From the NCBI GenBank assembly GCA_026770705.1, contig JANJGN010000008.1, positions 129,146,001-129,210,000 on the forward strand: DNA of 64,000 nt, given 5' to 3'. Source of the stretch: Isurus oxyrinchus (lineage: Eukaryota). Both the position numbers and the translations under genes were made by a program. The notes beneath the pieces were generated by a model, which searched no databases, was not told the origin of the DNA, and saw nothing but the letters and a program-made list of their open reading frames with translations. Within the stretch, counting starts at the first letter, position 1; each line of letters begins with the position of its first letter. This document shows, one piece after another, positions 1,801 to 56,589 of the stretch.

Positions 1801-2567
1801 CAGTTTTACTCCCTTCCTGTGTAATGGGCTGCCTGATCTCTGTTCAGAAACAATCACAATTAAGAAAGGTTATTTGTAGTATTTAGCTTATTTTTCCCAC
1901 TAGGCTGAGCAGTCTAGATGTTGACTCTTTGTGCAAAGACGTACTACTTCATAAATAATCTTGAATTTGTCATTTATCATATTCTCATCTTGCCCTGCAG
2001 TTATGGTTTAACTTATAACTGTGTCCAGAAAAATCAGATTATTTTGTTCAATTTAGTATTTTCCTCTGTAAAGTCTCCGTTCAAAATCATACAATGTTTA
2101 TCTAGGTTGCACAATCCAACTTTTCCAACATTATTCTGACTTAAAAATGTGGAAATATCAGGACTGGATATGGAATGCTCTTGGCATCCTTGGGTTCCAA
2201 GTTGCTGTGCCACAATTTTCCCTGTCTATGACACACTGTAACAGCTCTAACTCACAGCACCTCAGGAAATTGTTTACTGCTCCCTTTCTCTTGATTTCTG
2301 ACAGCTTGTTACAAGTGGAACAATTAAACCCTCTCACCAGGAATTTCCTCAAAGCTTCTCCTGCTCCCCAGACATAACTTTGACGGAACTTCATCAGAAG
2401 ACCTACTTGCCCGTGCTGCTAAAATCTTGATTGATGTTATGGTGCCCAAGTTAGGGAATTCCAGACATGTGTCTCTCTGAATGGAATGGAATTAATTAAG
2501 GCTACAACAAAAACAAAAATACCTGGAAAAACTCAGCAGGTCTGGCATCATCTGTGGAGAGGAGCAC

Positions 2568-2606
2568 AGTTAAAGTTTCGAGTCCGAATGACCCTTCAAC
2601 AGAACT
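2568..2606 (-). ncRNA. Minimal hammerhead ribozyme motif (degenerate)
   Basis: Minus strand agtt-CTGTTGA-a-gggtc-attcg-gactc-GAAA-cttt-aact; helices I and II pair, helix III palindrome mutated. Confidence 0.6.
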
Positions 2607-2636
2607 AAGTAAAAATAAAAGAGAACATTTTTACTT

Positions 2637-2675
2637 AGTTCTGTTGAAAGGTCATTTGGACTTGAAACGTTAACT
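2637..2675 (+). ncRNA. Minimal hammerhead ribozyme motif
   Basis: agtt-CTGTTGA-a-aggtc-atttg-gactt-GAAA-cgtt-aact; AACGTT palindrome at helix III. Confidence 0.65.
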
Positions 2676-3576
2676 GTGTTCGTCTCCACAGATGCTGCCA
2701 GACCTGCTGAGTTTTTCCAGGTATTTTTGTTTTTGTTTTGGACTTCTGACATCCACAGTTTTTTGCTTTTAATTAAGGCTACAGTTGCTCTATACAACAC
2801 TTAGCTCTGATGACAATGAAGTAAATGGGTTAATGCCTGTATAGTCCTGCTGTTATGCCCTCGCTGATGAAGATTCAACATTAGACCAGATGCTAAAAAA
2901 CGGAATTCCCATATAATCCCTGTTGGCAGGAAACAGTGATAATCGAAGGACACAACAAGTTGAGCCATGATTGTGGCAATTTAGAAAGAGGCATCAGCAG
3001 TGTCCCGTCACAAGACCACAGCCCTGCTCTCCAAAACAAGGAATGCCAGCTTGCACAAGATGATTAAAGAAAGTTGAAAAACACCTAAACTGTGTTGAAT
3101 GTAGTGTTGAAAATATTGAATGGAACCTAGACCAGGGATCAAACCCTCCATAAAAATACCATACGAGAGAAATTTGAAACCAGGATTATAAATATCTGTC
3201 GAAAATGTCACCTCTACTCTTACAATTCAATTAACAATGAATCACATTTCACTATTCACTGCAACACATAATGAAGAGTCATTTCAAATAGAAAGCAACA
3301 GACAGATGAAAATTAAACAGAAAATGGTAGAGGATAAATTGGTAGAAAACAGGCCTGTTCTTGAATTGGTTGTTTAGGTCTCTCACGCTCGTCTGTGAAT
3401 GAAGAAATACAGATCTTTCCCAGGACTTCCAGTAGCAAAGGAGAGAACAAATAAAGCAGTCCAGATGTTGTATTGTGGAATATTCTCTAAGGGACCCAAA
3501 ACTAGAAGTCAATTGCAGGATTCTTAATGCAAGCAGATTAATAGGAAGAAAGCCAGATCATTAACAAGACAGAGAG

Positions 3577-4810
3577 GGGATTTTTAACTCCCAAGAACAG
3601 GTGGGTTGGAGACAGGTGGGCAGTTAAAGTAAGTTATTTTTAGATCATGACCACAACCTGGCTTCTACGTGCCCACTTCCAGCTTTAATGGAAGCATATT
3701 TTGGATGGCTGTAAGTAAACTACACACAGAAACTGAGATCTTTATTTGTGCTGGTGGGCCGGTACTTACTGCAGCATTTTACATTCTAAGGAGATGGTAA
3801 CGAGATAATTTTAAATTGAATTCTACAGACTTTAAATTTAGCATCTCCAACATGGGTTTCCCAGAGCTTTGGAAACTGACCAGTGAAACAGAGGTGAGAT
3901 TGATTCACAGTTCAGGTCGATATTTAAAGTTGCATTTGCTCCATCTGAATTAAAGCTCACATATTGCAGCTGGTATCTCAGCTCCTTCTGGCAAAGGTTT
4001 GGCAGAAATGTTTGGTGTTCACATAACTTTTTCTAAATGTTAGAGACTCTGAACTGACAATATTAGGACAGGAGACACTTTGGTTGTGTTTGATAGCACA
4101 TTAGATGAGGAAACCCACCATCACTGTGGCAGCAATGACATGCTGTGGTGCGGTTAAGCAGGTGCACAAGACAGCGGTGCACAGCAGACAGAGAGGTGCA
4201 CAGGAGGTAAGAGGCTAACAGCAGGAGGCAAGGCTGCAGGATGCACTATCCACATAACAGGACGTTCAGAGAGAAGCTCAGCTTCCTTGACTTCTTAGAG
4301 AAGCGCTACTTCAATGTCAGGTGGCAATAGACACCTGCAGCCTCTGAGGAGCAATTCTGCTACCTGCTGGACCCAGCTAACACACATTGCCAGCAGCTGA
4401 GAAACACAGCTGCTTTGGTTCTGCTTTCCTCCACAATGCTACCAGAGGCAAATCAATAGTCTTACAGCCCAATGGACGTAAGTGCATTAGGCAGATATTG
4501 GATCAATTGTTTGCCAGGACTGGGGCTTATGCAAACTTCCCCTGTGATGATGACAATAGCCAGAATGAGCAGACACTTGAATTTGGCTGTACCCACAGGC
4601 ATAAAGTACCAATGGTTGCAACCAGAAGTTTTCATCAATCACAAACAATATTCATCCATCAATGCAGCAGCAAGAAGATGTGTGCCAAATTCCCTGGTAG
4701 AGATCATGGTAAGTTTATATGGAGGCAGTCAAACATTCCTTATCTTTTTGTTCCAGGAAGTAAACTTAAAGGCTGACTTCTTTAAACTTGGAGCATGGAA
4801 ACCCTGAGAG
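3577..4810 (+). mobile_element. PIF/Harbinger transposon remnant with decayed transposase
   Basis: Fragments QPEVFINHKQYSSINA and CAKFPGRDH resemble Harbinger transposase motifs N-RKG-HS-N and FPGS-HD; boundaries approximate. Confidence 0.5.
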
Positions 4811-4819
4811 CTCAACCAC

Positions 4820-10584: not shown

Positions 10585-11289
10585 TAAAGGCAAAAAACTG
10601 TGGATGGTGGAAATCCAAAATAAAAACAAAAATACCTGGAAAAACTCAGCAGGTCTGGGCAGCATGTGCGAGAGGAACACAGTTAACATTTCGAGTCCGA
10701 CTGACCCATCGACAGAACTAAGTAAAAATAGAACAAAGGTGAAATATAAGCTGGTTTAAGGGTGGGTGGGACAAGTAGAGCTGGATAGAGGGCCAGTGAT
10801 AGGTGGAGATAACCAAAAGCAGTCACAGACAAAAGAACAATGAGGTGTTGAAGCTGGTGATATTATCTAAGGAATGTGCTAATTAAGGGTAGAAAGCAGG
10901 ACAAGCAAGGTACAAATAGACCTAGTGGGGGTGGGGTGGGGTGAAGGAATCGAAAAAGGCTAAAAGGTAGAGATAAAACAATGGATGGAAATATATTTAA
11001 AAATAATGGAAATAGGTGGGAGAAGAAAAATCTGTATAAATTATTGGCAAAAAAGGGGGCTATCGGAAAGGGGGAGGGAGGGGATGGAGGAGAGAGTTCA
11101 TGATCTAAAATTGTTGAACTCAATATTCAGTCCAGAAGGCTGTAAAGTGCCTAGTGGAGGATGAGGTGCTGTTCCTCCAGTTTGTGTTGAGCTTCACTGG
11201 AACAATGCAGCTGGCCAAGGACAGACATGTGGGCATGAGAGCAGGGTGGAGTGTTGAAATGGCAAGTGACAGGGAGGTCTGGGTAATGC
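10585..11289 (-). mobile_element. Older 5'-truncated PLE (family A-related): endonuclease C-terminus, 3' UTR, hammerhead, long tail
   Basis: 11095-11289 aligns with 13080-13280 (GLNIEFNNFRS end); terminal repeat 10585-10760 includes the tail extension. Confidence 0.9.
10681..10719 (-). ncRNA. Minimal hammerhead ribozyme motif
   Basis: agtt-CTGTCGA-t-gggtc-agtcg-gactc-GAAA-tgtt-aact. Confidence 0.6.
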
Positions 11290-11770: not shown

Positions 11771-12650
11771 AATGTAAGAAAAGAAGATTGCAAAAAAAGA
11801 GATAGCAAGCACCCGAGAATTCACTTTTACTTTAGTCCTTCAATATAGTCATTGGAAGCGTTGCAGGCCTGAGAATTTTCGTTTTGGTTCTCTGAAGAAA
11901 ACCTAAGGTCGGAGGTTTCTGCTGATGAATTCACAATGGTTCACTTCAAGCAACCGCAAGTTTCTGGCTTTTCCCGTCAAAGTTGGTCAAGCCCATATAG
12001 TGAGAAGTTATAATCTTGCAGGTAAAACGAATTAGCCCTACCTCTCTCCCTGTGATGGATTTTCTGGGCAGGATCCTCTTTTTTGCTGGGTGAGATAGCT
12101 TCTCCCTGATCTTCAAGAATGACACATCTGGCCAGACTGAGAATTACACCTCTCTGAGGTATTTTTAACTATGAAAAATGGGTGGTAACAGATGAGTCTC
12201 CTGTTATGCACCTTGCCCGATCGGATCAGCTGCTGCTGCTGGTTTCAGACGATCGTCGATAGCTAAACTCATCCCCAGTGAATTTGGAATCTTGCCTGGT
12301 GTGAAATCGCAATCATAGATTACAGAGAACAAAATAGATTGGTACACTAACGTGGGGAGTGAAATTACTGATAACTCTTTCTTAAGGCTTTGGTGAACTT
12401 TTGAAGCTTTTTTTTTGCCGGAGTAATTAAATGACCAGGACGAGTTCAGTCATTGGACTATAAAATTGGATTATACAATAAATTACCAACTAATCTATCT
12501 GGTACTGTCTCCATTCAACTCATTGCAAATGTTGCAGTAACCACCCTCATTCTTTCTGTTGGTGAGAGAAGGCTGTCAGGAAGTACAAAACAAAAACAGA
12601 ATTACCTGGAAAAACTCAGCAGGTCTGGCAGCATCGGCGGAGAAGAAAAG

Positions 12651-12689
12651 AGTTGACGTTTCGAGTCTTCATGACCCTTCGACAGAACT
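12651..12689 (-). ncRNA. Minimal type I hammerhead ribozyme motif (PLE family A)
   Basis: agtt-CTGTCGA-a-gggtc-atgaa-gactc-GAAA-cGTC-aact; predicted cleavage between 12655 and 12654. Confidence 0.75.
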
Positions 12690-13085
12690 TGATTTCGAGT
12701 CCAGGAAAGAGTTGAAATATAAGTTGGTTTAAGGTGTGTGGGGGGGGGGGGGGGGGGGGCGCGGAGAGAGAGAGAGAGACAGAGGTGCTTGTGTAGACAA
12801 ACAAGCAGTGATAGAAGCAGATCATCAAAAGATGTCAGTGACAATGGGACAAAAGAACACATAGGTGTTAAAGTTAAAGTTGGTGATATTATCTAAACGA
12901 ATGTGCTAATTAAGAATGGATGGTAGGGCACTCAAGGTACAGCTCTAGTGGGGGTGGGGGGAGCATAAAAGATTTTAAAATATTTAAAAATAAGTGGGAA
13001 AAGAAAAATCTGTAAAATTTATAGGGAAAAAAAGGGGGGAAAAAAAGGGGGGAAACAGAAAGGGGGTGGGGATGGGGGAGGGAGC

Positions 13086-15835
13086 TCACGACCTAAAGTT
13101 ATTGAATTCAATATTCAGACCGGAAGGCTGTAAGGTGCCTAGTCGGAAGATGAGGTGTTGTTCCTCCAGTTTGCGTTGGGCTTCACTGGAACAATGCAGT
13201 AAGCCAAGGACAGACATGTGGGCAAGAGAGCAGGGTGGAGTGTTAAAATGGCAAGCGACAGGGAGGTTTGGGTCATTCTTGCGGACAGACCGCAGGTGTT
13301 CTGCAAAGCGGTCGCCCAGTTTACGTTTGGTCTCTCCAATGTAGAGGAGACCACATTGGGAGCAACGAATGCAGTAGACTAAGTTGGGGGAAATGCAAGT
13401 GAAATGCTGCTTCACTTGAAAGGAGTGTTTGGGCCCTTGGACGGTGAGGAGAGAGGAAGTGAAGGGGCAGGTGTTACATCTTTTGCGTGGGCATGGGGTG
13501 GTGCCATAGGAGGGGGTTGAGGAGTAGGGGGTGATGGAGGAGTGGACCAGGGTGTCCCGGAGGGAGCGATCCCTATGGAATGCCGATAAGGGGGGTGAAG
13601 GGAAGATGTGTTTGGTGGTGGCATCATGCTGGAGTTGGCGGAAATGGCGGAGGATGATCCTTTGAATGCGGAGGCTGGTGGGGTGATAAGTGAGGACAAG
13701 GGGGACCCTATCATGTTTCTGGGAGGGAGGAGAAGGCGTGAGGGCGGATGCGCGGGAGATGGGCCGGACACGGTTGAGGGCCCTGTCAACGACCGTGGGT
13801 GGAAAACCTCGGTTTAAGGAAGAAGGAGGACATGTCAGAGGAACCGTTTTTGAAGGTAGCATCATCGGAACAGATGCGACGAAGGCGAAGGAACTGGGAG
13901 AATGGGATGGAGTCCTTACAGGAAGCGGGGTGTGAGGAGCTGTAGTCGAGGTAGCTGTGGGAGTCGGTGGGTTTGTAATGGATATTAGTGGACAGTCTAT
14001 CACCAGAGATTGAGACAGAGAGGTCAAGGAAGGGAAGGGAAGTGTCAGAGATGGACCACGTGAAAATGATGGAGGGGTGGAGATTGGAAGCAAAATTAAT
14101 AAATTTTTCCAAGTCCCGACGAGAGCATGAAGCGGCACCGAAGTAATCATCGATGTACCGGAGAAAAAGTTGTGGAAGGGGGCCGGGGTAGGACTGCAAC
14201 AAGGAATGTTCCACATATCCCATAAAGAGACAGGCATAGCTGGGGCCCATGCGGGTACCCATAGCCACACCTTTTATTTGGAGAAAGTGAGAGGAGTTGA
14301 AGGAGAAATGCCAGACGGAGGAGAGTAGTGGTGGATGGGGATTGTTCGGGCCTCTGTTCGAGGAAGAAGCTAAGGGCCCTCAGACCATCCTGGTGGGGGA
14401 TGGAGGTGTAGAGGGATTGGACGTCCATGGTGAAGAGGAAGCGGTTGGAGCCAGGGGAACTGGAAATTGTTGATGTGACGTAAGGTGTCAGAGGAATCAC
14501 GGATGTAGGTGGGAAGGGGACTGGACAAGGGGAGAGAGAAGGAAGTCAAGATAACGAGAAATGAGTTCTGTGGGGCAGGAGCAAGCTGAGACGATCGGTC
14601 TACTGGGGCAGTTCTGTTTGTGGATTTTAGGTAGGAGATAGAAGCGGGCCGTCCGAGGTTGGGCGACTATCAGGTTGGAAGCTGTGGGAGGGAGATCCCC
14701 AGAGGAGATGAGGTCCGTGACAGTCCTGGAAACAATGGCTTGATGTTCAGTGGTGGGGTCATGGTCCAGGGAGAGGTAGGAGGAAGTGTCTGCGAGTTGA
14801 CGCTCAGCCTCCGCGAGGTAGAGGTCAGTGCGCCAGACAACAACAGCACCACCCTTGTCAGCGGGTTTGATGACAATGTCAGGGTTGGACCTGAGAGAAT
14901 GGAGTGCAGTAAGTTCAGAGAGAGACAGGTTAGAATGGGTGAGAGGAGCAGAGAAATTGAGACGACTAATGTCGCGCCGACAGTTCTCAATGAAAAGATC
15001 AAGAGAAGGTAAGAATCCAGAGGGAGGGGGTCCAGGTGGAGGGAGAATATTGGAGATGGGTTAAAAGGATCCGTTGAACTGGGAGAGGACTCCTGCCCAA
15101 AGAAGTGAGCCCGGAGACGAAGACGGCGAAAGAAGAGTTCAGTATCATGCCGAGCCCGAAATTCATTGAGGTGAGGGCGTAAGGGTATGAAACTAAGTCC
15201 TTTGCTGAGCACTGAACGTTCAGCATCGGAGAGGGGAAGGTCAGGGGGGTATAGTGAATACACGGCTGGGGCTGGGATTGGAAGATGGGGTGGGGACGGA
15301 GGGACAGGCTGGGGGTGGAGGGTCCTAGATGGGTGTTGGTGTCGATGAGTTGTTGGAGCTTGCGTTCCTTAGCAGTTGAGAGAAAGAGAAAAAGTTTCTT
15401 GTTGAGGCGTCGGATGAGCCGAAGGATAAAATGAAACTGGGGGCACGCGCAGCTTTGAAAAAGGGTACGGCGGTGCTGCTGGAGGGAGAGGTCGAGTGTG
15501 TGTTCATACGGCGGCGCATGGCACTGAGTGTGGTTTTCAGAATGTGACGGGGAACAGCAGTCTGAGAAACGTTTTATATGTCCCGGAGATACCGGTAATC
15601 CTGGGTGTGGGTTCGAAAGATGAGGGGGTGGAATTTCAGTTGAAATCCACGTGGGGTAAGTCGGAGACGGAGACAGTCACTGAGAAAGGAGATATGGCTG
15701 TGAAAGCGGGTTTTAGTAAACACCTTGTCAAACACTAGGAGGGAAATGGAAAGCAAAGAAGGTGAACAAGGGCAACAGAGAGATACGGAAATCTTGTCGC
15801 AGAGAGGAACAGAACTTCTTCAAGGAGGTAGGCAT
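13086..15835 (-). pseudogene. PLE RT/GIY-YIG ORF, copy 1 (frameshifted as assembled)
   Basis: Starts ATG CCT ACC TCC TTG AAG AAG at 15835; YIDD, GTRMGPSYA and YIGET motifs are spread over several frames; many +1/+2 indels in homopolymer/dinucleotide runs and a 23-nt deletion near 14309. Confidence 0.9.
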
Positions 15836-15837
15836 TT

Positions 15838-15925
15838 CTTGAAGAGCAGTGGCAGTCAATTAAACACAGAGATAAAAACAAAGAGAACTGCGGATGCTGG
15901 AAATGCAAAACAAAAACAGAATTAC
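15838..15925 (-). other. Predicted 88-nt GT-AG intron in the PLE 5' UTR
   Basis: Donor CAG|GTAATT at 15925, branch-like TTGAC about 18 nt from the 3' end, acceptor CTCTTCAAG| at 15838, then AA-ATG of the ORF. Confidence 0.7.
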
Positions 15926-15970
15926 CTGGAAAAACTCAGCAGGTCTGGCAGCATCGGCGGAGAAGAAAAG

Positions 15971-16009
15971 AGTTGACGTTTCGAGTCTTCATGACCCTTC
16001 GACAGAACT
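15971..16009 (-). ncRNA. Minimal type I hammerhead ribozyme motif (PLE family A)
   Basis: Identical to 12651-12689. Confidence 0.75.
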
Positions 16010-16403
16010 TGATTTCGAGTCCAGGAAAGAGTTGAAATATAAGTTGGTTTAAGGTGTGTGGGGGGGGGGGGGCGCGGGAGAGAGAGAGAGAGACAGAGGT
16101 GCTTGTGTAGACAAACAAGCAGTGATAGAAGCAGATCATCAAAAGATGTCAGTGACAATGGGGACAAAAGAACACATAGGTGTTAAAGTTAAAGTTTGGT
16201 GATATTATCTAAACGAATGTGCTAATTAAGAATGGATGGTAGGGCACTCAAGGTACAGCTCTAGTGGGGGTGGGGGGAGCATAAAAGATTTTAAAATATT
16301 TAAAAATAAGTGGGAAAAGAAAAATCTGTAAAATTTATAGGGAAAAAAAGGGGGGAAAAAAAAGGGGGGGAAACAGAAAGGGGGTGGGGATGGGGGAGGG
16401 AGC

Positions 16404-18274
16404 TCACGACCTAAAGTTATTGAATTCAATATTCAGACCGGGAAGGCTGTAAGGTGCCTAGTCGGAAGATGAGGTGTTGTTCCTCCAGTTTGCGTTGGGC
16501 TTCACTGGAACAATGCAGTAAGCCAAGGACAGACATGTGGGCAAGAGAGCAGGGTGGGAGTGTTAAAATGGCAAGCGACAGGGAGGTTTGGGTCATTCTT
16601 GCGGACAGACCGCAGGTGTTCTGCAAAGCGGTCGCCCAGTTTACGTTTGGTCTCTCCAATGTAGAGGAGACCACATTGGGAGCAACGAATGCAGTAGACT
16701 AAGTTGGGGGAAATGCAAGTGAAATGCTGCTTCACTTGAAAGGAGTGTTTGGGCCCTTGGACGGTGAGGAGAGAGGAAGTGAAGGGGCAGGTGTTACATC
16801 TTTTGCGTGGGCATGGGGTGGTGCCATAGGAGGGGGTTGAGGAGTAGGGGGTGATGGAGGAGTGGACCAGGGTGTCCCGGAGGGAGCGATCCCTACGGAA
16901 TGCCGATAAGGGGGGTGAAGGGAAGATGTGTTTGGTGGTGGCATCATGCTGGAGTTGGCGGAAATGGCGGAGGATGATCCTTTGAATGCGGAGGCTGGTG
17001 GGGTGATAAGTGAGGACAAGGGGGACCCTATCATGTTTCTGGGAGGGAGGAGAAGGCGTGAGGGCGGATGCGCGGGAGATGGGCCGGACACGGTTGAGGG
17101 CCCTGTCAACGACCGTGGGTGGAAAACCTCGGTTAAGGAAGAAGGAGGACATGTCAGAGGAACCGTTTTTGAAGGTAGCATCATCGGAACAGATGCGACG
17201 AAGGCGAAGGAACTGGGAGAATGGGATGGAGTCCTTACAGGAAGCGGGGTGTGAGGAGCTGTAGTCGAGGTAGCTGTGGGAGTCGGTGGGTTTGTAATGG
17301 ATATTAGTGGACAGTCTATCACCAGAGATTGAGACAGAGAGGTCAAGGAAGGGAAGGGAAGTGTCAGAGATGGACCACGTGAAAATGATGGAGGGGTGGA
17401 GATTGGAAGCAAAATTAATAAATTTTTCCAAGTCCCGACGAGAGCATGAAGCGGCACCGAAGTAATCATCGATGTACCGGAGAAAAAGTTGTGGAAGGGG
17501 GCCGGGGTAGGACTGCAACAAGGAATGTTCCACATATCCCATAAAGAGACAGGCATAGCTGGGGCCCATGCGGGTACCCATAGCCACACCTTTTATTTGG
17601 AGAAAGTGAGAGGAGTTGAAGGAGAAATTGTTCAACGTGAGAACAAGTTCAGCCAGACGGAGGAGAGTAGTGGTGGATGGGGATTGTTCGGGCCTCTGTT
17701 CGAGGAAGAAGCTAAGGGCCCTCAGACCATCCTGGTGGGGGATGGAGGTGTAGAGGGATTGGACGTCCATGGTGAAGAGGAAGCGGTTGGAGCCAGGGAA
17801 CTGGAAATTGTTGATGTGACGTAAGGTGTCAGAGGAATCACGGATGTAGGTGGGAAGGGACTGGACAAGGGGAGAGAGAAGGAAGTCAAGATAACGAGAA
17901 ATGAGTTCTGTGGGGCAGGAGCAAGCTGAGACGATCGGTCTACCGGGGCAGTTCTGTTTGTGGATTTTAGGTAGGAGATAGAAGTGGGCCGTCCGAGGTT
18001 GGGCGACTATCAGGTTGGAAGCTGTGGGAGGGAGATTCCCAGAGGAGATGAGGTCCGTGACAGTCCTGGAAACAATGGCTTGATGTTCAGTGGTGGGGTC
18101 ATGGTCCAGGGAGAGGTAGGAGGAAGTGTCTGCGAGTTGACGCTCAGCCTCCGCGAGGTAGAGGTCAGTGCGCCAGACAACAACAGCACCACCCTTGTCA
18201 GCGGGTTTGATGACAATGTCAGGGTTGGACCTGAGAGAATGGAGTGCAGTAAGTTCAGAGAGAGACAGGTTAGA
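16404..18274 (-). pseudogene. PLE ORF, copy 2 (5'-truncated; RT domain open, endonuclease C-terminus frameshifted)
   Basis: ORF 16502-18442 contains IKPADKGG, KIHK, DVQSLYTSIP, YIDD, CPRKRCNTC and VYCIRC..C...YIGET. Confidence 0.9.
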
Positions 18275-18280
18275 CCCATC

Positions 18281-19494
18281 TCCGGCCCATCTCCCGCGCA
18301 TTCCGCCCTCACGCCTTCTCCTCCCTCCCAGAAACATGATAGGGTCCCCCTTGTCCTCACTTATCACCCCACCAGCCTCCGCATTCAAAGGATCATCCTC
18401 CGCCATTTCCGCCAACTCCAGCATGATGCCACCACCAAACACATCTTCCCTTCACCCCCCTTATCGGCATTCCGTAGGGATCGCTCCCTCCGGGACACCC
18501 TGGTCCACTCCTCCATCACCCCCTACTCCTCAACCCCCTCCTATGGCACCACCCCATGCCCACGCAAAAGATGTAACACCTGCCCCTTCACTTCCTCTCT
18601 CCTCACCGTCCAAGGGCCCAAACACTCCTTTCAAGTGAAGCAGCATTTCACTTGCATTTCCCCCAACTTAGTCTACTGCATTCGTTGCTCCCAATGTGGT
18701 CTCCTCTACATTGGAGAGACCAAACGTAAACTGGGCGACCGCTTTGCAGAACACCTGCGGTCTGTCCGCAAGAATGACCCAAACCTCCCTGTCGCTTGCC
18801 ATTTTAACACTCCACCCTGCTCTCTTGCCCACATGTCTGTCCTTGGCTTACTGCATTGTTCCAGTGAAGCCCAACGCAAACTGGAGGAACAACACCTCAT
18901 CTTCCGACTAGGCACCTTACAGCCTTCCGGTCTGAATATTGAATTCAATAACTTTAGGTCGTGAGCTCCCTCCCCCATCCCCACCCCCTTTCTGTTTCCC
19001 CCCTTTTTTTCCCCCCCTTTTTTTCCCTATAAATTTTACAGATTTTTCTTTTCCCACTTATTTTTAAATATTTTAAAATCTTTTATGCTCCCCCCACCCC
19101 CACTAGAGCTGTACCTTGAGTGCCCTACCATCCATTCTTAATTAGCACATTCGTTTAGATAATATCACCAACTTTAACTTTAACACCTATGTGTTCTTTT
19201 GTCCCATTGTCACTGACATCTTTTGATGATCTGCTTCTATCACTGCTTGTTTGTCTACACAAGCACCTCTGTCTCTCTCTCTCTCTCCGCGCCCCCCCCC
19301 CCCCCCCACACACCTTAAACCAACTTATATTTCAACTCTTTCCTGGACTCGAAATCAAGTTCTGTCGAAGGGTCATGAAGACTCGAAACGTCAACTCTTT
19401 TCTTCTCCGCCGATGCTGCCAGACCTGCTGAGTTTTTCCAGGTAATTCTGTTTTTGTTTTGCATTTCCAGCATCCGCAGTTCTCTTTGTTTTTA
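18281..19494 (+). mobile_element. Inverted 3' segment of PLE (linker, complete GIY-YIG, 3' UTR, hammerhead, long tail)
   Basis: Reverse complement of 15872-17088; frame open to GLNIEFNNFRS* at 18964. Confidence 0.95.
19358..19396 (+). ncRNA. Minimal type I hammerhead ribozyme motif (PLE family A)
   Basis: agtt-CTGTCGA-a-gggtc-atgaa-gactc-GAAA-cGTC-aact; predicted cleavage after C19392. Confidence 0.75.
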
Positions 19495-20089
19495 TGTCAG
19501 GAAGTACAGACTTCACCAGAGATTCTGCACCCACCTCACCAACCAGCACTGGGTTTCGACAGAGCACAACGTGCTGCTCTGCACTCCTGATTACTTTAAT
19601 CAGCTAAGTAGTGTTTGGTCCACATTAACAGGGTGAGCAGTAAACTGTTGAAATACAAAATGTATAATTCACATGTATGGCACAAATCTTCCGGTCTCCA
19701 TACTTTCTAAATTGGAAGTTAATTTGGGATAATTATGTCAGGAGCCCGCGAAAGTCCTCACACACACACATGCACTGAATTGTCCAGGACTTTTTAACTT
19801 CCAAAGGGCATTTCTGTTGCTCGGGGCCGCCTGAAAAAGTCTGACACTGAGCTCAGTGTCAAAGACTTGGGCCAGATACACGGGATATACCTGAATACTT
19901 ACCCAGAAATAGCATCTTGGATTACACCTTGTCTAATTCAGAGATTAGCTCGCATAATTGAACAGAGCACCACAACCAACACCCCACCCCGCTATGAGCC
20001 ACCCTGACCTAACCCAACCCAACCCAAAACAAAAACAGAATTACCTGGAAAAACTCAGCAGGTCTGGCAGCATCGGCGGAGAAGAAAAG

Positions 20090-20128
20090 AGTTGACGTTT
20101 CGAGTCCTCATGACCCTTCGACAGAACT
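20090..20128 (-). ncRNA. Minimal type I hammerhead ribozyme motif (PLE family A)
   Basis: Same as the other copies; the single change (atgag vs atgaa) falls in loop II. Confidence 0.75.
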
Positions 20129-20514
20129 TGATTTCGAGTCCAAGAAAGAGTTGAAATATAAGCTGGTTTTAAGGTGTGTGTGTGGGGGGGCGGAGAGAGA
20201 GAGAGAGACAGAGGTGCTTGTGTAGACAAACACGCAGTGATAGAAGCAGATCATCAAAAGATGTCAGCGACAATGGTACAAAAGAACACATAGGTGTTAA
20301 AGTTAAAGTTGGTGATATTATCTAAATGAATGTGCTAATTAAGAATGGATGGTAGGGCACTCAAGGTACAGCTCTAGTGGGGGTGGGGGGGAGCATAAAA
20401 GATTTTAAAATATTTAAAAATAAGTGGGAAAAGAAAAATCTGTAAAATTTATAGGGAAAAAAAGGGGGGAAAAAGGGGGGAAACAGAAAGGGGGTGGGGG
20501 ATGGGGGAGGGAGC

Positions 20515-23270
20515 TCACGACCTAAAGTTATTGAATTCAATATTCAGACCGGAAGGCTGTAAGGTGCCTAGTTGGAAGATGAGGTGTTGTTCCTCCAGTT
20601 TGCGTTGGGCTTCACTGGAACAATGCAGTAAGCCAAGGACAGACATGTGGGCAAGAGAGCAGGGGTGGAGTGTTAAAATGGCAAGCGACAGGGAGGTTTG
20701 GGTCATTCTTGCGGACAGACCGCAGGTGTTCTGCAAAGCGGTCGCCCAGTTTACGTTTGGTCTCTCCAATGTAGAGGAGACCACATTGGGAGCAACGAAT
20801 GCAGTAGACTAAGTTGGGGGAAATGCAAGTGAAATGCTGCTTCACTTGAAAGGAGTGTTTGGGCCCTTGGACGGTGAGGAGAGAGGAAGTGAAGGGGCAG
20901 GTGTTACATCTTTTGCGTGGGCATGGGGTGGTGCCATAGGAGGGGGTTGAGGAGTAGGGGGTGATGGAGGAGTGGACCAGGGTGTCCCGGAGGGAGCGAT
21001 CCCTATGGAATGCCGATAAGGGGGGTGAAGGAAAGATGTGTTTGGTGGTGGCATCATGCTGGAGTTGGCGGAAATGGCGGAGGATGATCCTTTGAATGCG
21101 GAGGCTGGTGGGGTGATAAGTGAGGACAAGGGGGACCCTATCATGTTTCTGGGAGGGAGGAGAAGGCGTGAGGGCGGATGCGCGGGAGATGGGCCGGACA
21201 CGGTTGAGGGCCCTGTCAACGACCGTGGGTGGAAAACCTCGGTTAAGGAAGAAGGAGGACATGTCAGAGGAACCGTTTTTGAAGGTAGCATCATTGGAAC
21301 AGATGCGACGAAGGCGAAGGAACTGGGAGAATGGGATGGAGTCCTTACAGGAAGCGGGGTGTGAGGAGCTGTAGTCAAGGTAGCTGTGGGAGTCGGTGGG
21401 TTTGTAATGGATATTGGTGGACAGTCTATCACCAGAGATTGAGACAGAGAGGTCAAGGAAGGGAAGGGAAGTGTCAGAGATGGACCACGTGAAAATGATG
21501 GAGGGGTGGAGATTGGAAGCAAAATTAATAAATTTTTCCAAGTCCCGACGAGAGCATGAAGCAGCACCGAAGTAATCATCGATGTACCGGAGAAAAAGTT
21601 GTGGAAGGGGGCCGGGGTAGGACTGCAACAAGGAATGTTCCACATATCCCATAAAGAGACAGGCATAGCTGGGGCCCATGCGGGTACCCATAGCCACACC
21701 TTTTATTTGGAGAAAGTGAGAGGAGTTGAAGGAGAAATTATTCAGTGAAAGAACAAGTTCAGCCAGACGGACGAGAGTAGTGGTGGATGGGGATTGTTCG
21801 GGCCTCTGTTCGAGGAAGAAGTGGAGAGCCATCATATCATCCCGGTGGGGGATGGAGGTGTAGAGGGATTGGACGTCCATGGTGAAGAGGAAGCGGTTGG
21901 AGCCAGGGAACTGGAAATTGTTGATGTGACGTAAGGTGTCAGAGGAATCATGGATGTAGGTGGGAAGGGACTGGACAAGGGGAGAGAGAAGGGAGTCAAG
22001 ATAACGAGAAATGAGTTCTGTGGGGCAGGAGCAAGCTGAGACGATCGGTCTACCGGGGCAGTTCTGTTTGTGGATTTTGGGTAGGAGATAGAAGCGGGCC
22101 GTCCGAGGTTGGGCGACTATCAGGTTGGAAGCTGTGGGAGGGTGATCCCCAGAGGAGATGAGGTCAGTGACAGTCCTGGAAACAATGGCTTGATGTTCAG
22201 TGGTGGGGTCATGGTCCAGAGAGAGGTAGGAGGAAGTGTCTGCGAGTTGACGCTCAGCCTCCGCGAGGTAGAGGTCAGTGCGCCAGACAACAACAGCACC
22301 ACCCTTGTCAGTGGGTTTGATGACAATGTCAGGGTTGGACCTGAGAGAATGGAGTGCAGTAAGTTCAGAGAGAGACAGGTTAGAATGGGTGAGAGGAGCA
22401 GAGAAATTGAGACGACTAATGTCGCGCCGACAGTTCTCAATGAAAAGATCAAGAGAAGGTAAGAATCCAGAGGGAGGGGTCCAGGTGGAGGGAGAATATT
22501 GGAGATGGGTAAAAGGATCCGTTGAACTGGGAGAGGACTCCTGCCCAAAGAAGTGAGCCCGGAGACGAAGACGGCGAAAGAAGAGTTCAGTATCATGCCG
22601 AGCCCGAAATTCATTGAGGTGAGGGCGTAAGGGTATGAAACTAAGTCCTTTGCTGAGCACTGAACGTTCAGCATCGGAGAGGGGAAGGTCAGGGGGTATA
22701 GTGAATACAAGGCTGGGGCTGGGATTGGAAGATGGGGTGGGGACGGAGGGACAGGCTGGGGTGGAGGGTCCTAGATGGGTGTTGGTGTCGATGAGTTGTT
22801 GGAGCTTGCGTTCCTTAGCAGTTGAGAGAAAGAGAAAAAGTTTCTTGTTGAGGCGTCGGATGAGCCGAAGGATAAAATGAAACTGGGGGCACGCGCAGCT
22901 TTGAAAAAGGGTACGGCGGTGCTGCTGGAGGGAGAGGTCGAGTGTGTTCATACGGCGGCGCATGGCACTGAGTGTGGATTTCAGAATGTGACGGGAACAG
23001 CAGTCTGAGAAACGTTTTATGTCCCGGAGATACCGGTAATCCTGGGTGGGTTCGAAAGATGAGGGGTGGAATTTCAGTTGAAATCCACGTGGGGTAAGTC
23101 GGAGACGGAGGCAGTCACTGAGAAAGGAGATATGGCTGTGAAAGCGGGTTTTAGTAAACACCTTGTCAAACACTAGGAGGGAAATGGAAAGCAAAGAAGG
23201 TGAACAAGGCAACAGAGAGATACGGAAATCTTGTCGCAGAGAGGAACAGAACTTCTTCAAGGAGGTAGGC
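20515..23270 (-). CDS. PLE polyprotein: reverse transcriptase + Cys-rich linker + GIY-YIG endonuclease (Neptune-type); ~918 aa if ATG and one frameshift are restored
   Basis: 882-aa ORF 20612-23260 with IKPTDKGG, KIHK, GRPIVS, DVQSLYTSIP, GVAMGTRMGPSYA, YIDD, FLDL, CPRKRCNTC, VYCIRCSQCGLLYIGET and HFN; an extra G in the run near 20662-20665 shifts the last ~48 codons (ends GLNIEFNNFRS). Confidence 0.9.
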
Positions 23271-23739
23271 CAACTCTTTCTCCCACTATCAACCCGCAGA
23301 CCCGACCCGACTCTCTCCAGCCGCCACCACTACCTCGCGACCTGACCCAATTGCTCACCCATCCACTCACTCAACCACCATCTCCCAATCACTCACTCAC
23401 TCACCCACCCCCTCACTAATTCATTCACTCACTCAGTCACCCGCTCACCCACCCACTCATGCGCTAACCCACTGAAAGACTTACCTGAATACAACAGCTA
23501 ATGTTTTAAAATGGGGGTGTGTCCTCTCTTCGCCTGTCTTCTCCTGTGCTTGTCGGTCTTCCACAGGGATAGCTGCGCTGACCCATTGCTGCTGTAGTTA
23601 GGATCAGAAGTCCTGGCTGAAATAACATAAAATGTTCAGGGCACAGAAATCTTTATGGGCAGCAAGAATGCACCCAGCATCAGTGCTGATCAGAACATCT
23701 TGGCCTATAACTTATTCTCATATATAAATACATACATAT

Positions 23740-26180: not shown

Positions 26181-26247
26181 ATTGACCAAATTAACCATAA
26201 AAATGTTGAAATATTATTTTTGATACAAACTACATAAACAATGTGCT

Positions 26248-27760: not shown

Positions 27761-27800
27761 AAAAATTTATCTAACTTGAGTATTGCGGAAAAGAGGTGTT

Positions 27801-27836
27801 TTGTTGAAGCTTTTCATCTTGCACTCATCAGGACAA
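27801..27836 (-). ncRNA. Minimal hammerhead ribozyme motif (family B, canonical core)
   Basis: ttgtc-CTGATGA-gtgcaagat-GAAA-agct-TC-aacaa; AAGCTT palindrome; deviations from pairing are CpG-type changes. Confidence 0.8.
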
Positions 27837-27870
27837 TTGTGAGAATACCAATGCCAAGGGAAACAACTAC

Positions 27871-28025
27871 TTTATACTATATGAGAAGACAGTGCTGATT
27901 GGTTGGCAAGTGGACTCTGATTGGTAGAGGCATTGCCATGGAAAATGCATCACTTAATGGTGACTGACAGTTAACTGCCAAACATTGTTTGAAATTTTAA
28001 ACCAGGGAGCTTGACTCTGATTGGT
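27871..28025 (-). promoter_or_regulatory. Putative Pol II promoter of the family B terminal repeat (3x CCAAT, X-box-like, TATA)
   Basis: ACCAATCAG at 27895-27903, 27917-27925 and 28017-28025; TATAAA at 27871-27876; TATAAA also at 51629 and 56322 in the other copies. Confidence 0.6.
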
Positions 28026-28403
28026 CAAGGCCTTACCCTGAGAAATGAACCAGCAAATGGCTATAATTTCGTTTGTTTAGCTGAAACAGGTACAAGATGA
28101 AAAGCTTTGACAAAATATCTCTTTTCAGCAATACTCAGGTTCTGTAATACCAAACAACAATTTATCTAACAGTAATTGCCATTTGCAGAAGAAAGTCCCA
28201 AACTTTGATCATGCTTTTTATGAAGAAGTGTTTCTTAATTTCACTCCTGAAAGGTCTGGCTGTAATTGTTACAGCACCCCACCCCCCCCCCCCCCCTGCC
28301 CCCCCAAATTCTAAACCCAACTAATGGAAATATGAATAAAACAGAGATTTTGGAAATACTCAGCAGGTCAGGTAGAATATGTGGAGAGAGAAACAAAGAC
28401 AAT

Positions 28404-51389: not shown

Positions 51390-51757
51390 TACAGACAGAA
51401 AGAACATGTACACACACTGCACTTGTTTCAGCTAAACAAAATAAGTGGCAGCCATTTGCTGGTTTGTTCCCCAGGGCAATGTCTTGACCAATCTGAGTCA
51501 AGCTGCCTGTTTTCAATTTCAAACAATGCTAGGCAGTTAACGGTCAGTTCATCAACTGGTGCAATATCAATGGCAACATCTCTATCAGAGTCCACCTGCC
51601 AACCAACCAGCACTCTCTTCTCATACAGTATAAATATACTGTTTCCCCCGACATTGGTATTTTCTTGCGAATTGTCCTGATGAGTTTAAGACAAAAAGTT
51701 TTGACAAAAATGTCTCCTTTTTAAGCAATAATAAAGATCTGTACTATCAAATGACTA
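51390..51757 (+). mobile_element. 5'-truncated PLE family B 3' end (ORF tail, promoter, hammerhead, long tail)
   Basis: RQKEHVHTLHLF resembles a PLE ORF C-terminus; the remainder aligns with 27776-28094 and 55984-56244. Confidence 0.75.
51672..51707 (+). ncRNA. Hammerhead motif, family B (G12 mutated)
   Basis: ttgtc-CTGATGA-gtttaagac-aAAA-agtt-tt-gacaa; perfect 5-bp helix I. Confidence 0.6.
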
Positions 51758-53934: not shown

Positions 53935-54450
53935 CTGCACTTCAAGAAGGATGTGAAGGTCTTTAAGAGAGTGCAGAGATGATTTACGAGAATGATTCCA
54001 GGGATGAGGGAATTTAGCTGTAAGGTTAGGTTGGAGAAGCTGGGCTTATTCTCCTTGGAGCATAAGGGGAGATTTGATAGAAATGTACAAGATTATGGCA
54101 GGTTTGGATAAGGTAGATAAAGAAAAGCAGTTCCCATTAGCTGATGGTACAAGGAATAGGGGACACAGATTTTAGGTTTTGGGCAAGAATTTCAGGGGAA
54201 TGTGAGGAAGATCTTTTTTACGCAGAGAGTTTTAATGATCTGGAACTTGCTGCCTCCTAGGGTGGTGGCAGTGGAGGCAATGAATCACTTCAAAAGGAAA
54301 TCAGATAATCACATGAGGGAAATAAATTTGCTGGGCTACGGGTAGAGAGCAGGAAAATAAAACTGACTGAATTGCTCTGCAGGGAGTTAACATGGACTTG
54401 ATGGGTCGCATAGCCTCCTTCTGTGCCATAAGGACTCCATGACTCTATGA
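53935..54450 (+). mobile_element. CR1 LINE 3' fragment
   Basis: gagagtgcagagatgatttacgagaatgattccaggg...; 3' repeat gactccatgactctatga. Confidence 0.85.
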
Positions 54451-56026
54451 TATATAAAGCTTGAATCAGGGATGAAAATGAGTCAAGGTGGCACTCGGCA
54501 GAGTATTTGAGAAAGGATTGCAGGCAAGAATTAAAGGTTCAAACTTAATGCTCAGAATGTGTACATTGTGAATTAAACAATGCTGCTATATCTAATCACC
54601 ACACCTAGAGTGATCCTGTAAATAGGTGGTGCATAATGGCCCAATGTCATTTATCATGCTTTGCTATATGTTCTTACTAAACTCAATGTGATCTCAAACA
54701 ACACTTACCCTGGGCTTTAAACTGTACACTGTACATATCATTCAAGAGAATATTGAACATGTCGTAAGGTCACAGTGACAATGACAATGTACACCTTTCT
54801 GAATAAGGTCTTGTTAATTACACCAATGTCTGAAATACCTTAATGGTTTGTTCCCTTTCACCATTCTGTAGAATTAAACAAATTGTTTAATGACCTCCTG
54901 ATGATCATTTGGGAGATGGTGTCCTGAAGAAATAAAAGCAAAATGTATCTCCTTTCTCCATTATGTCAACTATTGGAATAAAACTGATGTGCTGGTTGCT
55001 CATGCCTGTCTGTCCATTGTATTACAGTTGTAATTTTCTGTCTAGCTGAGCAGAACATGGGACAGATTGTAGTTGGCTTTCTCTTTTTATTAATTTTACG
55101 GTTTGACGGGTGAATGTTGCATTAAAAATGAATCGGCAGCACCGAGAATTAATCTGCACAATCTGCTTATTTAATAGAAAAATGTGCCATATAATTTTTG
55201 TGCTGCATCTAAAAATGTTAAATATGAAAAGAGTGATTAACATTTTGGTGTCCACCAGCCGCAGTGAATCTATCAGAAACATACAATAGCTTCACACCTA
55301 ATGGAGAGGTGCTGAATTTCATCACTTTTCATGTGGCAGGACATTTATATTTGTATTTTCTACACTATTTATGTTTACTCATTATTTAAGTATGTCAGCA
55401 AGTTAAATTGGTTTTCCTTCAGTGTGATTATAAATTTGTTTTGGCAGGTAACACTCACTGGAGGACAACTGCAAGGCTTCCAGAAATAATGATTTACAGC
55501 TGGGCATGAAGAGATGCATAAGTAGGGATGGACATGCTGATTTTCCCTCCTTTACTGTGGCAGTTGTTTTTATTTCTCTGACAATAGTTTTATTAAGCTG
55601 AAAACATGGCCAAATGCTGAATGCATAAAGAGCAGCCAAATTGGCAAGGACTGAGATGTCAAGATCGCTCTGAAAATTTGTGACTCAGAGCGTTCATTTA
55701 ATCTGCTTAGTGCAAAATATTTTACTGAATGAAATGATATGATCAGAGGTGGAATGGGAGGCAAGCCACTGTGATGGACTTCAAGTAGTTTAATTGTGAT
55801 TGGAGCTGCGTTGATGTAACAGACAGTCTAGTGGGGGTGCTGAGAGATCATTGTTGTAGTTATTGCTATCTAAAATATATGGATATGACTCAGGACAGAC
55901 CCAAAACTAAGTTTACCAATCACAACAAAGTGGTTTTCAGTGAGGAACAAACAAATCAAATATGAAACTATCTGGATAAATTGTCATGTGGTAGTACAGA
56001 ATTTGAGTATTGCTGAAAAGAGAGAC

Positions 56027-56062
56027 ATGGCAAACCTTTTCATCTTGCACTCATCAGGATAC
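56027..56062 (-). ncRNA. Hammerhead motif, family B
   Basis: gtatc-CTGATGA-gtgcaagat-GAAA-aggt-tt-gccat. Confidence 0.6.
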
Positions 56063-56362
56063 CTCGCAAAATTAACAATATAAGGGGAGAACAACAATTT
56101 GTACTGTGTGAGAAGACATTGCTTATTGGTTAGCAAGTGTACTCTCATTGGTAGAGGCTTTGCTATGGAGAATGCACCAGTGATGGTGATTGACAGTTAA
56201 CTGCCAAGCATTGTTTGAAATTTAAACCAGGCAGCTTGACCCTGGTGCATTCTCCATGGCAACACCTTTACCAGTCAGAGTACACTTGCCAACCAATCAT
56301 CAGCACTCTCTTCACATACAGTATAAATTGTCTTCTTCCCCCTTTATTGATATTGTTGCGAA

Positions 56363-56398
56363 GTATCCTGAAGAGTGCAAGATGAAAAGCTTTGACAT
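56363..56398 (+). ncRNA. Hammerhead motif, family B
   Basis: gtatc-CTGAAGA-gtgcaagat-GAAA-agct-tt-gacat. Confidence 0.7.
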
Positions 56399-56589
56399 GT
56401 CTCTTTTTCCAACAATAAATTGGAACAGTGGCAAAAGGCACATAACATGGGCAAATGCATAATAGTAAGATGATTGAAAAGAAATAAATAATGGGAATCT
56501 AAACAAAAAGCCTCTCACCCAACCATAGAAACCAATATGCAGAGGGAGCTGTGTCTTTGTGGATAATTCATTGAAATCAATTAGCGTAA

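What the first reader, a model, noticed from the sequence alone, without database searches (positions are those of the whole stretch)
2492..56422. One insertion architecture repeated four times in two unrelated PLE families: inverted 3' ends, only one with a tail, inside a TSD
Seen: 2507-2768 (TSD 15 bp), 12588-19494 (14 bp), 27776-28158 (12 bp) and 55984-56414 (~8 bp) each consist of two 3' ends of the element pointing outward. One end always stops at a fixed short position; the other extends ~31-35 nt (family A) or ~20 nt (family B) further. Known: inverted segments and an optional terminal tail occur in Drosophila Penelope. Inference: the strict short/long pairing across a 26-fold size range suggests both nicked target strands prime reverse transcription, at two different defined internal sites in the element RNA, and the two cDNAs are then joined tail to tail. 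This would yield MITE-like ribozyme-bearing hairpins with no transposase involved.
Basis: partly seen in the sequence, partly recalled or inferred. Interest (0 to 1): 0.85.

Follow-up and report, generated by a model that had tools for sequence, protein, structure and literature searches.

The report
Canonical Penelope-like element insertion structure
These are ordinary insertions of Penelope-like retrotransposons in a probable shark genome, showing the already published pattern of two outward-facing element ends inside one target duplication, with a short extra tail on one side only.

Summary
The four insertions are real. Each is bounded by one direct repeat (15, 14, 12 and about 8 bp) and ends on both sides in an outward-facing element 3' end, one of them 19-35 nt longer. 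Family A is a Penelope-like element (PLE): an 882-aa ORF carries an RT domain and a weak GIY-YIG match.

Corrections:
- The 6.9-kb unit holds three segments, not two.
- One family B short end stops 5-8 nt early.
- Three further copies in the window have a single 3' end and no inverted partner.
- Family B has no coding copy here, so its PLE status is not shown.

[quoted passage not shown] The core of the proposed mechanism is also in print. PMC11167929 shows that both target strands are cut and extended, and that reverse transcription starts at two adjacent internal RNA sites bracketing the tail. That paper saw no difference in start site between strands.

Four of four mixed pairs has a chance probability of about 0.06, so strict pairing is not established. 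Earlier follow-ups of this scan reached the same verdict on other DNA of this genome.

The parts
2492..2506 (.). Unit 1 target-site duplication, left copy (15 bp)
   Evidence: Exact repeat of 2769-2783, read
2507..2627 (-). Unit 1 short-end (S) arm of family A. The 3' end is at 2507. The head-to-head junction lies somewhere in 2616-2627.
   Evidence: (arms 89.7% alike)
2628..2768 (+). Unit 1 long-end (L) arm of family A. The tail is about 2738-2768.
2769..2783 (.). Unit 1 target-site duplication, right copy
10585..11287 (-). Old (about 79-87% alike) 5'-truncated family A copy. It has an L end (tail about 10585-10615), no inverted partner and no clear duplication.
12574..12587 (.). Unit 2 target-site duplication, left copy (14 bp)
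   Evidence: Exact repeat of 19495-19508
12588..15871 (-). Unit 2 copy A: the full unit, with its S end at 12588. An ATG lies at 15835-15833 on the minus strand. The ORF is broken into pieces.
15872..18274 (-). Unit 2 copy B: a tandem, 5'-truncated copy. Its 3' end keeps the tail (about 15873-15907) and runs straight into copy A, forming a pseudo-LTR.
18275..18280 (.). 6-nt filler at the head-to-head junction of copies B and C
18281..19494 (+). Unit 2 copy C: the inverted 5'-truncated copy, with an L end (tail about 19460-19494)
19495..19508 (.). Unit 2 target-site duplication, right copy
20027..23270 (-). Copy D: a separate family A insertion with an S end only. It holds the 882-aa ORF at 20612-23260. 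Its 5' end falls inside the start codon seen in copy A. No inverted partner and no clear duplication. Both flanks are C/A-rich simple sequence.
27764..27775 (.). Unit 3 target-site duplication, left copy (12 bp)
   Evidence: Exact repeat of 28159-28170
27776..28089 (-). Unit 3 main arm of family B, with its S end at 27776. Its inner end coincides with the 5' end of B3.
28090..28158 (+). Unit 3 inverted arm of family B, with an L end (tail 28139-28158)
28159..28170 (.). Unit 3 target-site duplication, right copy
51422..51755 (+). B3: a single family B copy with an L end (tail about 51736-51754). No significant inverted arm to its left.
55976..55983 (.). Unit 4 direct repeat, left copy (8 bp)
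55984..56244 (-). Unit 4 L arm of family B (tail 55984-56002)
56245..56413 (+). Unit 4 S arm of family B. It ends 5-8 nt before the S position of unit 3. The two arms are 78% alike.
56414..56421 (.). Unit 4 direct repeat, right copy. It overlaps element-like sequence.

Best explanation
These are standard integration products of endonuclease-containing Penelope-like retrotransposons (PLEs) in a probable shark genome.

Inferred from published biochemistry: the element's GIY-YIG nuclease nicks both target strands 8-15 bp apart, which gives the target duplication. Each freed 3'-OH can prime reverse transcription of element RNA. Priming starts not at the RNA's end but at one of two protein-defined internal sites, S and L, which lie 19-35 nt apart. 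The interval between them is the 'tail'.

When both strands prime, two antisense cDNAs grow toward each other and are joined head to head, with a few bases of microhomology or filler. That leaves two outward-facing 3' ends. When the template is a multimeric transcript, one arm runs through more than one unit and creates the pseudo-LTR (unit 2). When only one strand primes, a plain 5'-truncated copy results, with either an S or an L end (D, the old copy, B3).

Shown here: the anatomy, the discreteness of the ends, and the single origin of the three segments of unit 2. Inferred: the order of events, and why paired ends are mixed.
For: Family A is a PLE:
- The 882-aa ORF matches RVT_1 (E 1.8e-07, above the curated cut-off) and GIY-YIG (E 8.7e-4).
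- The database search scored 8000 candidates, found 210 proteins at E <= 1e-30 and listed 120. All 120 listed carry one or more of PF00078, PF28514 and PF26215, some also PF01541. The two named closest hits are from the shark Chiloscyllium punctatum, at 67% and 63% identity.

Architecture:
- 4 of 4 units have tails-out arms inside one direct repeat.
- Unit 2 is an inverted truncated copy, a partial tandem and a full copy.
- Ends are discrete: 3 S and 4 L ends of family A align to two positions, and family B does likewise except for one S end.

Single event: copies A, B and C of unit 2 differ by 1-4 substitutions over 1.18 kb and share 12-15 differences from neighbour D.

Head-to-head junctions join different element positions in 4 of 4 units, as expected for two separate cDNAs:
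- unit 2: about 2346 versus 1180 nt from the S end
- unit 3: 314 versus 49
- unit 4: 242 versus about 170
- unit 1: about 109-121 versus 110 (not clearly asymmetric if the 12-nt junction stretch is filler)

Genome level, from Logan contigs of run X1. These are summed word depths, not copy numbers.
- Depth rises about tenfold from the 5' to the 3' part of the body.
- The bin holding the tail and the last 63 nt (15872-15970) has 23 times the depth of the adjacent 5' bin.
- The S boundary (15907) is a listed loose-end site: 194 contigs, agreement 0.37.

Literature:
- PMC8557442 passages: inverted 5'-truncated copy, pLTR, and a 30-40-bp tail often at only one end.
- PMC3846280 passages: a 31-bp tail on one of the inverted pLTRs, with a 9-bp TSD.
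- PMC11167929 Main text: both strands cleaved and extended, and two internal start sites bracket the tail.
Against: - No experiment or read-level evidence here shows the order of events.
- No empty site was examined, so the direct repeats are taken as target duplications from their exactness and position only.
- The GIY-YIG match is below Pfam's cut-off (20.0 versus 22.6 bits).
- Family B has no coding copy in the window and no match to family A, so filing it as a PLE rests on architecture and on CUGAUGA/GAAA boxes.
- The L boundary was not among the 6 X1 loose-end rows shown (2233 rows not shown), so a genome-wide two-peak distribution of ends is not demonstrated.
- The published in vitro work gives no reason why paired ends should be mixed.
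Confidence: 0.85

Rival explanations
1. The two nicked strands are obliged to use different start sites, one S and one L, so every inverted pair is short plus long. A physical reason compatible with the data would be one dimeric ribonucleoprotein seeding two cDNAs on adjacent sites of a single RNA, where the same site cannot be occupied twice.
For: - 4 of 4 inverted pairs in the window are mixed, across two unrelated sequences and sizes from 262 to 6907 bp.
- In unit 2 both primers end in ACA-3', yet one arm starts at S and the other at L. Primer sequence therefore did not choose the site there.
- The published wording has the tail on one of the two inverted ends.
- PMC11167929 reports an AlphaFold2-predicted dimer.
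- Earlier unchecked notes of this scan report the same asymmetry in other windows.
Against: - In vitro, no apparent difference in start site between top and bottom strands (PMC11167929).
- The literature says 'often' and 'optionally', not always.
- With 5 S and 6 L among 11 outer ends, 4 of 4 mixed has probability of about 0.06 under independence (my arithmetic).
- If one RT trailed the other on one RNA, the L arm should usually be the shorter. It is longer in unit 4 (242 versus about 170 nt).
Confidence: 0.3
2. Snap-back or self-priming: a single cDNA or template folds back and copies itself, giving the inverted repeat. This was proposed for rotifer PLEs that have palindromes at the inverted junction.
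For: PMC3846280 discussion infers self-priming from palindromes at inverted junctions in Adineta vaga. The filler at the B/C junction repeats a nearby 9-mer, a sign of slippage.
Against: A fold-back would join an element position to itself. Here the two sides of the junction are clearly different element positions in 3 of 4 units (1 is ambiguous), with 6 nt of filler or about 3 nt of microhomology and no palindrome. Snap-back also does not explain a tail taken from element sequence at one outer end.
Confidence: 0.07
3. The short units are MITE-like DNA transposons with terminal inverted repeats, moved by a transposase.
For: Units 1 and 4 look like hairpins with flanking direct repeats.
Against: - Repeat lengths vary (15, 14, 12, 8 bp), whereas a transposase gives a fixed length.
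- The arms of family A units are the 3' end of an RT-encoding element.
- The termini are unequal by a templated tail.
- Unit 3 has arms of 314 and 69 nt.
Confidence: 0.03
4. The composites arose from two or three independent insertions or later rearrangement, not from one event.
For: The region is dense in PLE copies: D lies 532 bp from unit 2.
Against: One exact duplication flanks each whole composite, and no inner duplications are seen. Copies A, B and C are 99.7-99.9% alike and jointly distinct from D.
Confidence: 0.05

Closest known systems
Insertion units of EN+ Penelope-like elements (Penelope/Poseidon, Neptune, Nematis, Naiad), as drawn in Craig et al. 2021, Fig. 2 legend (PMC8557442), and Pen2a_Av of Adineta vaga (PMC3846280)
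   Same: Single RT plus GIY-YIG ORF, steep 5' truncation, partial tandem forming a pseudo-LTR, an adjacent inverted 5'-truncated copy, a 30-40-bp tail at one end, a short target duplication, and a hammerhead-like motif near the 3' end.
   Different: The host is a probable shark. Family B's tail is only 19-20 nt. Family A's hammerhead-like core reads CUGUYGA instead of CUGAUGA. Very short two-ended fragments (262-431 bp) are prominent.
PAc (Poseidon of Anolis carolinensis) in vitro system, Frangieh et al. 2024 (PMC11167929)
   Same: Two discrete internal start sites bracket the tail. Both target strands are usable as primers. Targets are AT-rich: the duplications here are 7/8, 10/12, 10/15 and 8/14 A+T.
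   Different: In PAc the start sites lie 111-118 nt inside the ORF, in an AC-rich stem-loop. Here they lie about 38-74 nt upstream of the ATG of copy A, in U/G-rich sense sequence, and no stable fold was found (z 0.97). The in vitro work saw no strand preference, whereas the 4 genomic pairs here are all mixed.
Twin priming of human LINE-1
   Same: The second nicked strand also primes reverse transcription, giving an inverted segment inside one target duplication.
   Different: In L1 the second primer anneals at a variable internal position, so the inverted part is an upstream piece of the element. Here both arms start at the element's defined 3' start sites.
Retrozymes and other small non-autonomous hammerhead-bearing retroelements (review PMC6155905, passages)
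   Same: Family B is a non-coding unit of about 315-335 nt with CUGAUGA and GAAA boxes, presumably moved in trans.
   Different: No tandem or circular form was seen in the window. Helix II is poorly formed and there is no Rfam hammerhead match.

Membership tests
EN+ Penelope-like element (family A) | Reverse transcriptase domain in a single ORF | tested here: met
   RVT_1, E 1.8e-07, 31.5 bits against a cut-off of 29.6. All 120 proteins listed carry one or more of PF00078, PF28514 and PF26215.
EN+ Penelope-like element (family A) | C-terminal GIY-YIG endonuclease | tested here: inconclusive
   GIY-YIG at residues 817-851, E 8.7e-4, 20.0 bits, below the 22.6 cut-off. The ORF ends soon after the motif. 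Some homologues carry PF01541.
EN+ Penelope-like element (family A) | Partial tandem forming a pseudo-LTR, with an adjacent inverted 5'-truncated copy | tested here: met
   Copies B, A and C of unit 2
EN+ Penelope-like element (family A) | [quoted passage not shown] | tested here: met
   31-35 nt, present at one of the two ends in 2 of 2 family A paired units
EN+ Penelope-like element (family A) | Hammerhead ribozyme motif in the pseudo-LTR | tested here: inconclusive
   No Rfam match at gathering score or at E <= 10. By eye there is a minimal motif with helix II, GAAAC and a short helix I, but the core reads CUGUYGA in 4 of 4 aligned copies. Activity is untested.
EN+ Penelope-like element (family A) | Target-site duplication proven by an empty site | not tested
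   Exact 14- and 15-bp flanking repeats were seen, but no empty allele or orthologue was examined.
Penelope-like element (family B) | A related autonomous copy encoding RT and GIY-YIG | tested here: inconclusive
   No ORF of 180 aa or more lies near any family B copy, and there is no similarity to family A. Nothing outside the window could be searched.
Penelope-like element (family B) | Tails-out inverted arms, one-sided tail and target duplication | tested here: met
   2 of 3 copies. The third is single-ended with an L end.
Penelope-like element (family B) | Minimal hammerhead motif | tested here: inconclusive
   CUGAUGA and GAAA boxes and a palindromic AAGCUU are seen in the alignment. Helix II is only about 2 bp. 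No Rfam match.
MITE / TIR DNA transposon | Fixed-length target duplication and equivalent termini | tested here: not met
   Duplications of 15, 14, 12 and 8 bp, and termini unequal by 19-35 nt

The most novel reading that the evidence does not exclude
Paired PLE ends are obligatorily one short plus one long. One dimeric element ribonucleoprotein would hold a single RNA and seed two cDNAs, one from each nicked target strand, on the two adjacent start sites. Steric exclusion would then forbid short/short and long/long products. Such coupling would be invisible in bulk in vitro assays, which score each strand separately.
Probability: 0.2. Interest if true: 0.55.

Novelty: already known. Interest (0 to 1): 0.2.

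Why it matters
PLE integration is still only partly understood, and clean genomic examples help. Unit 2 is young: its three segments differ by 1-4 substitutions per 1.18 kb. It shows in one product a read-through of more than one unit, a tail kept at the internal tandem junction, and an inverted arm. The one open point worth a real test is whether the two start sites are coupled within a single integration event. A whole-assembly census in this repeat-rich genome could settle that cheaply. As it stands, the finding documents a known hallmark in a new host and adds no new principle.

Tried and rejected
- **Hammerhead models.** An Rfam scan of the whole window at gathering score gave 0 matches. 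Permissive scans of 19200-20300 and 27700-28250 gave only chance-level matches to unrelated families. No ribozyme claim can rest on a model.
- **A fold that would place S and L on one stem.** RNAalifold on 4 L-type ends gave -14.5 kcal/mol with no convincing compensatory pair between the tail and upstream sequence. The single-sequence fold of 202 nt had z = 0.97, and 166 of 200 shuffles folded at least as well. Rejected.
- **A hidden inverted arm left of B3.** Local alignments against 5 family B ends were no better than shuffles; the best case had 33 of 300 shuffles reaching the observed score. Rejected.
- **A duplication for copy D and for the old copy.** None was recognisable.
- **Genome-wide end census from reads.** The three raw-read runs were of other organisms: X21 laid 12 reads, X22 and X23 laid 0. 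Only Logan contigs of X1 were informative, and they give no counts of S versus L and no pairing.
- **More copies from public collections.** The invariant 23-mer gave 0 loci in metagenome contigs and 0 in viral contigs.
- **Copies in another shark.** The database search found no protein above 67% identity.
- **Literature on pairing.** The search 'Penelope-like' + pLTR + tail + inverted found 8 papers, and 'Penelope-like' + 'twin priming' found 3, none about PLE mechanism by their listings. I found no tabulation of short/long pairing. Figs S1-S2 of PMC11167929 (genomic ends) and the supplement of PMC8557442 may hold such counts.
- **Other.** The findings look-up by sequence for family B was blank.

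Full report
**What is there**

The window has no N. I mapped all copies of both repeat families with self-BLAST and alignments.

The invariant family A 3' motif occurs 7 times, against 0 expected from shuffles:

| Position | Strand | End type | Context |
|---|---|---|---|
| 2507 | - | short (S) | unit 1 |
| 2768 | + | long (L) | unit 1 |
| about 10585 | - | L | solo old copy |
| 12588 | - | S | unit 2 |
| 15872 | - | L | internal tandem junction of unit 2 |
| 19494 | + | L | unit 2 |
| 20027 | - | S | solo copy D |

Family B has 5 ends:

| Position | Strand | End type | Context |
|---|---|---|---|
| 27776 | - | S | unit 3 |
| 28158 | + | L | unit 3 |
| about 51755 | + | L | solo copy B3 |
| 55984 | - | L | unit 4 |
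| about 56413 | + | S | unit 4; ends 5-8 nt early |

All four exist at the stated coordinates. They have exact flanking repeats of 15, 14 and 12 bp and one of 8 bp. Exact repeats of 12-15 bp placed precisely at both boundaries are far beyond chance (inference: 4^-12 or less per placement). The 8-bp repeat is weaker, because it overlaps element-like sequence and the boundary is defined by the repeat itself.

In each unit both outer ends are element 3' ends pointing outward, one of them extended by a templated tail:
- unit 1: about 31 nt
- unit 2: 33-35 nt
- unit 3: 20 nt
- unit 4: 19 nt

In family A the three S ends align within about 4 nt and the four L ends within about 3 nt. There is 1-3 nt of overlap with the target, so the ends are discrete but not base-exact.

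**Corrections to the observation**

Unit 2 is three segments, not two. Read on the minus strand, it is an inverted truncated copy C (19494-18281), 6 nt of filler, a 5'-truncated copy B (18274-15872) whose 3' end keeps the tail, and directly after it the full unit A (15871-12588), which ends at S.

A, B and C differ by only 1-4 substitutions over their shared 1.18 kb and share 12-15 differences from neighbour D. They therefore stem from one source and, with the single outer duplication, from one event.

Unit 3 is a 314-nt arm plus a 69-nt inverted arm. The inner end of the long arm coincides with the 5' end of solo copy B3, so family B looks like a mini-element of about 315-335 nt with a defined 5' end.

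Three of the seven insertion units in the window are single-ended: D (S), the old family A copy (L) and B3 (L). A search for a hidden inverted arm beside B3 gave nothing above shuffles.

**What the elements are**

Copy D carries an 882-aa ORF with an RVT_1 match above Pfam's cut-off and a GIY-YIG match just below it. A database search scored 8000 candidates, found 210 proteins at E <= 1e-30 and listed 120. The best named hits are two uncharacterised proteins of the shark Chiloscyllium punctatum, at 67% and 63% identity. Family A is therefore an endonuclease-type Penelope-like element in a probable shark genome.

Family B has no ORF of 180 aa or more nearby and no similarity to family A. Its PLE status rests on the same end architecture and on CUGAUGA/GAAA boxes with a palindromic AAGCUU.

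No Rfam hammerhead model matched either family. That may in part reflect the minimal form of PLE hammerheads, which lack helix III (PMC6155905 passages). The family A core reads CUGUYGA in 4 of 4 aligned copies, so 'ribozyme-bearing' is unproven.

**Genome-level evidence**

Logan contigs of run X1 were laid on 13100-16050. Summed word depth rises about tenfold from the 5' to the 3' part of the body:

| Bin | Summed word depth |
|---|---|
| 15674-15772 | 0.89 million |
| 13199-13297 | 8.8 million |
| 15773-15871 | 0.90 million |
| 15872-15970 (tail plus last 63 nt) | 20.8 million |
| 15971-16050 | 8.1 million |

The S boundary (15907) is a listed loose-end site, with 194 contigs and low agreement (0.37), meaning many different flanks.

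These are not copy numbers. Only 6 X1 loose-end rows were shown and 2233 rows were not.

The three raw-read runs were of other organisms (12, 0 and 0 reads laid). Nothing in this output bears on pairing.

**Comparison with what is known**

The layout is the published hallmark of PLEs.
- Craig et al. [quoted passage not shown]
- Arkhipova et al. [quoted passage not shown]
- A curation guide lists inverted pLTRs and short 3' extensions as PLE peculiarities (PMC8969392; passages).
- Frangieh et al. 2024 (PMC11167929; abstract and whole Main text) showed in vitro that the full-length protein cleaves and extends both target strands. Reverse transcription starts at two adjacent internal sites not homologous to the target, and the tail 'clearly corresponds' to the interval between them.

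What remains of it is the strict rule of one site per strand. [quoted passage not shown]

**How strong is the strict pairing here?**

Four of four inverted pairs are mixed. With 5 S and 6 L among the 11 outer ends, independence predicts a mixed pair with probability 0.496, so 4 of 4 has probability of about 0.06 (my arithmetic). That is suggestive, not significant.

Two details favour coupling. In unit 2 both primers end in ACA-3', yet one arm begins at S and the other at L. The rule also holds in two unrelated sequences.

One detail speaks against the simplest one-RNA, leading-and-trailing picture. In unit 4 the L arm (242 nt without its tail) is longer than the S arm (about 170 nt).

S junctions show 2-3 nt of possible primer-template pairing in 5 of 5 cases (CA next to the element in 3 of 3 family A S ends; AAC and TAT in family B). 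This could also explain the shifted S end of unit 4. It cannot be separated from the nuclease's own cleavage preference.

**Rivals**

- Snap-back copying predicts symmetric junctions. The junction joins clearly different element positions in 3 of 4 units; unit 1 is ambiguous.
- A transposase-moved MITE predicts a fixed duplication length and equal termini. Neither holds.
- Independent nested insertions predict inner duplications and unequal ages. Neither is seen in unit 2.

**Earlier notes of this scan (leads, not evidence)**

Several windows of the same genome carry the same pattern. Three follow-ups judged it the canonical PLE structure, one of them counting seven such pairs. The scan has therefore found this before on other DNA of this genome, and my independent reading agrees.

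**Verdict**

[quoted passage not shown] 2004, Cervera and de la Pena 2014, and Ostertag and Kazazian 2001 (recalled).

Noticed in passing
window 15833-15975 (minus strand): Both start sites (S and L) and the tail lie about 38-74 nt upstream of the ATG of copy A. They sit in a stretch that begins GT and ends AG on the sense strand. Another first-stage note reads this stretch as a retained 88-nt intron. I did not test splicing.
   Followed up: no
window 23268-23272: Copy D loses similarity to copy A inside the start codon: only the G of the ATG is shared. D therefore holds the longest ORF in the window (882 aa, counted from a TTG) but lacks the ATG and the 5' leader. Both of its flanks are C/A-rich simple sequence, in line with the published microsatellite insertion bias of PLEs (PMC8557442 abstract).
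   Followed up: partly
window 18275-18295: The 6-nt filler at the head-to-head junction of copies B and C, together with the next 3 nt, repeats a 9-mer (CCCATCTCC) found again 12 nt further on. This looks like slippage during the template switch.
   Followed up: partly
window 19366-19372, 15995-16001, 2650-2656, 10704-10710 (approx.): The family A hammerhead-like core box reads CUGUCGA or CUGUUGA in young and old copies alike (4 of 4 aligned), so the departure from CUGAUGA is conserved and not a decay of single copies.
   Followed up: partly
run X20: A run labelled coral metatranscriptome (RNA) holds 0.47 of the sampled 31-letter words of the shark PLE body. That needs near-identical sequence, so it suggests shark material in that sample or a labelling or index mix-up.
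   Followed up: no
window 12574-12587 / 19495-19508 and 2492-2506: Three of the four nick sites inferred for family A units read ACA^G: both sides of unit 2 and one side of unit 1. This is a possible cleavage preference besides the general A+T richness.
   Followed up: no
window 12734-12783, 16054-16098, 19267-19314: Each young family A copy carries a poly-G run followed by (GA)n about 150 nt from its 3' end. Most differences among copies A, B and C are length changes in this tract, which may be assembly or polymerase slippage.
   Followed up: no
window 7077-7651 and 49126-49554; 23941-26405: Other unrelated dispersed repeats, 75-87% alike, direct and inverted, appear in the self-comparison. 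Not examined.
   Followed up: no
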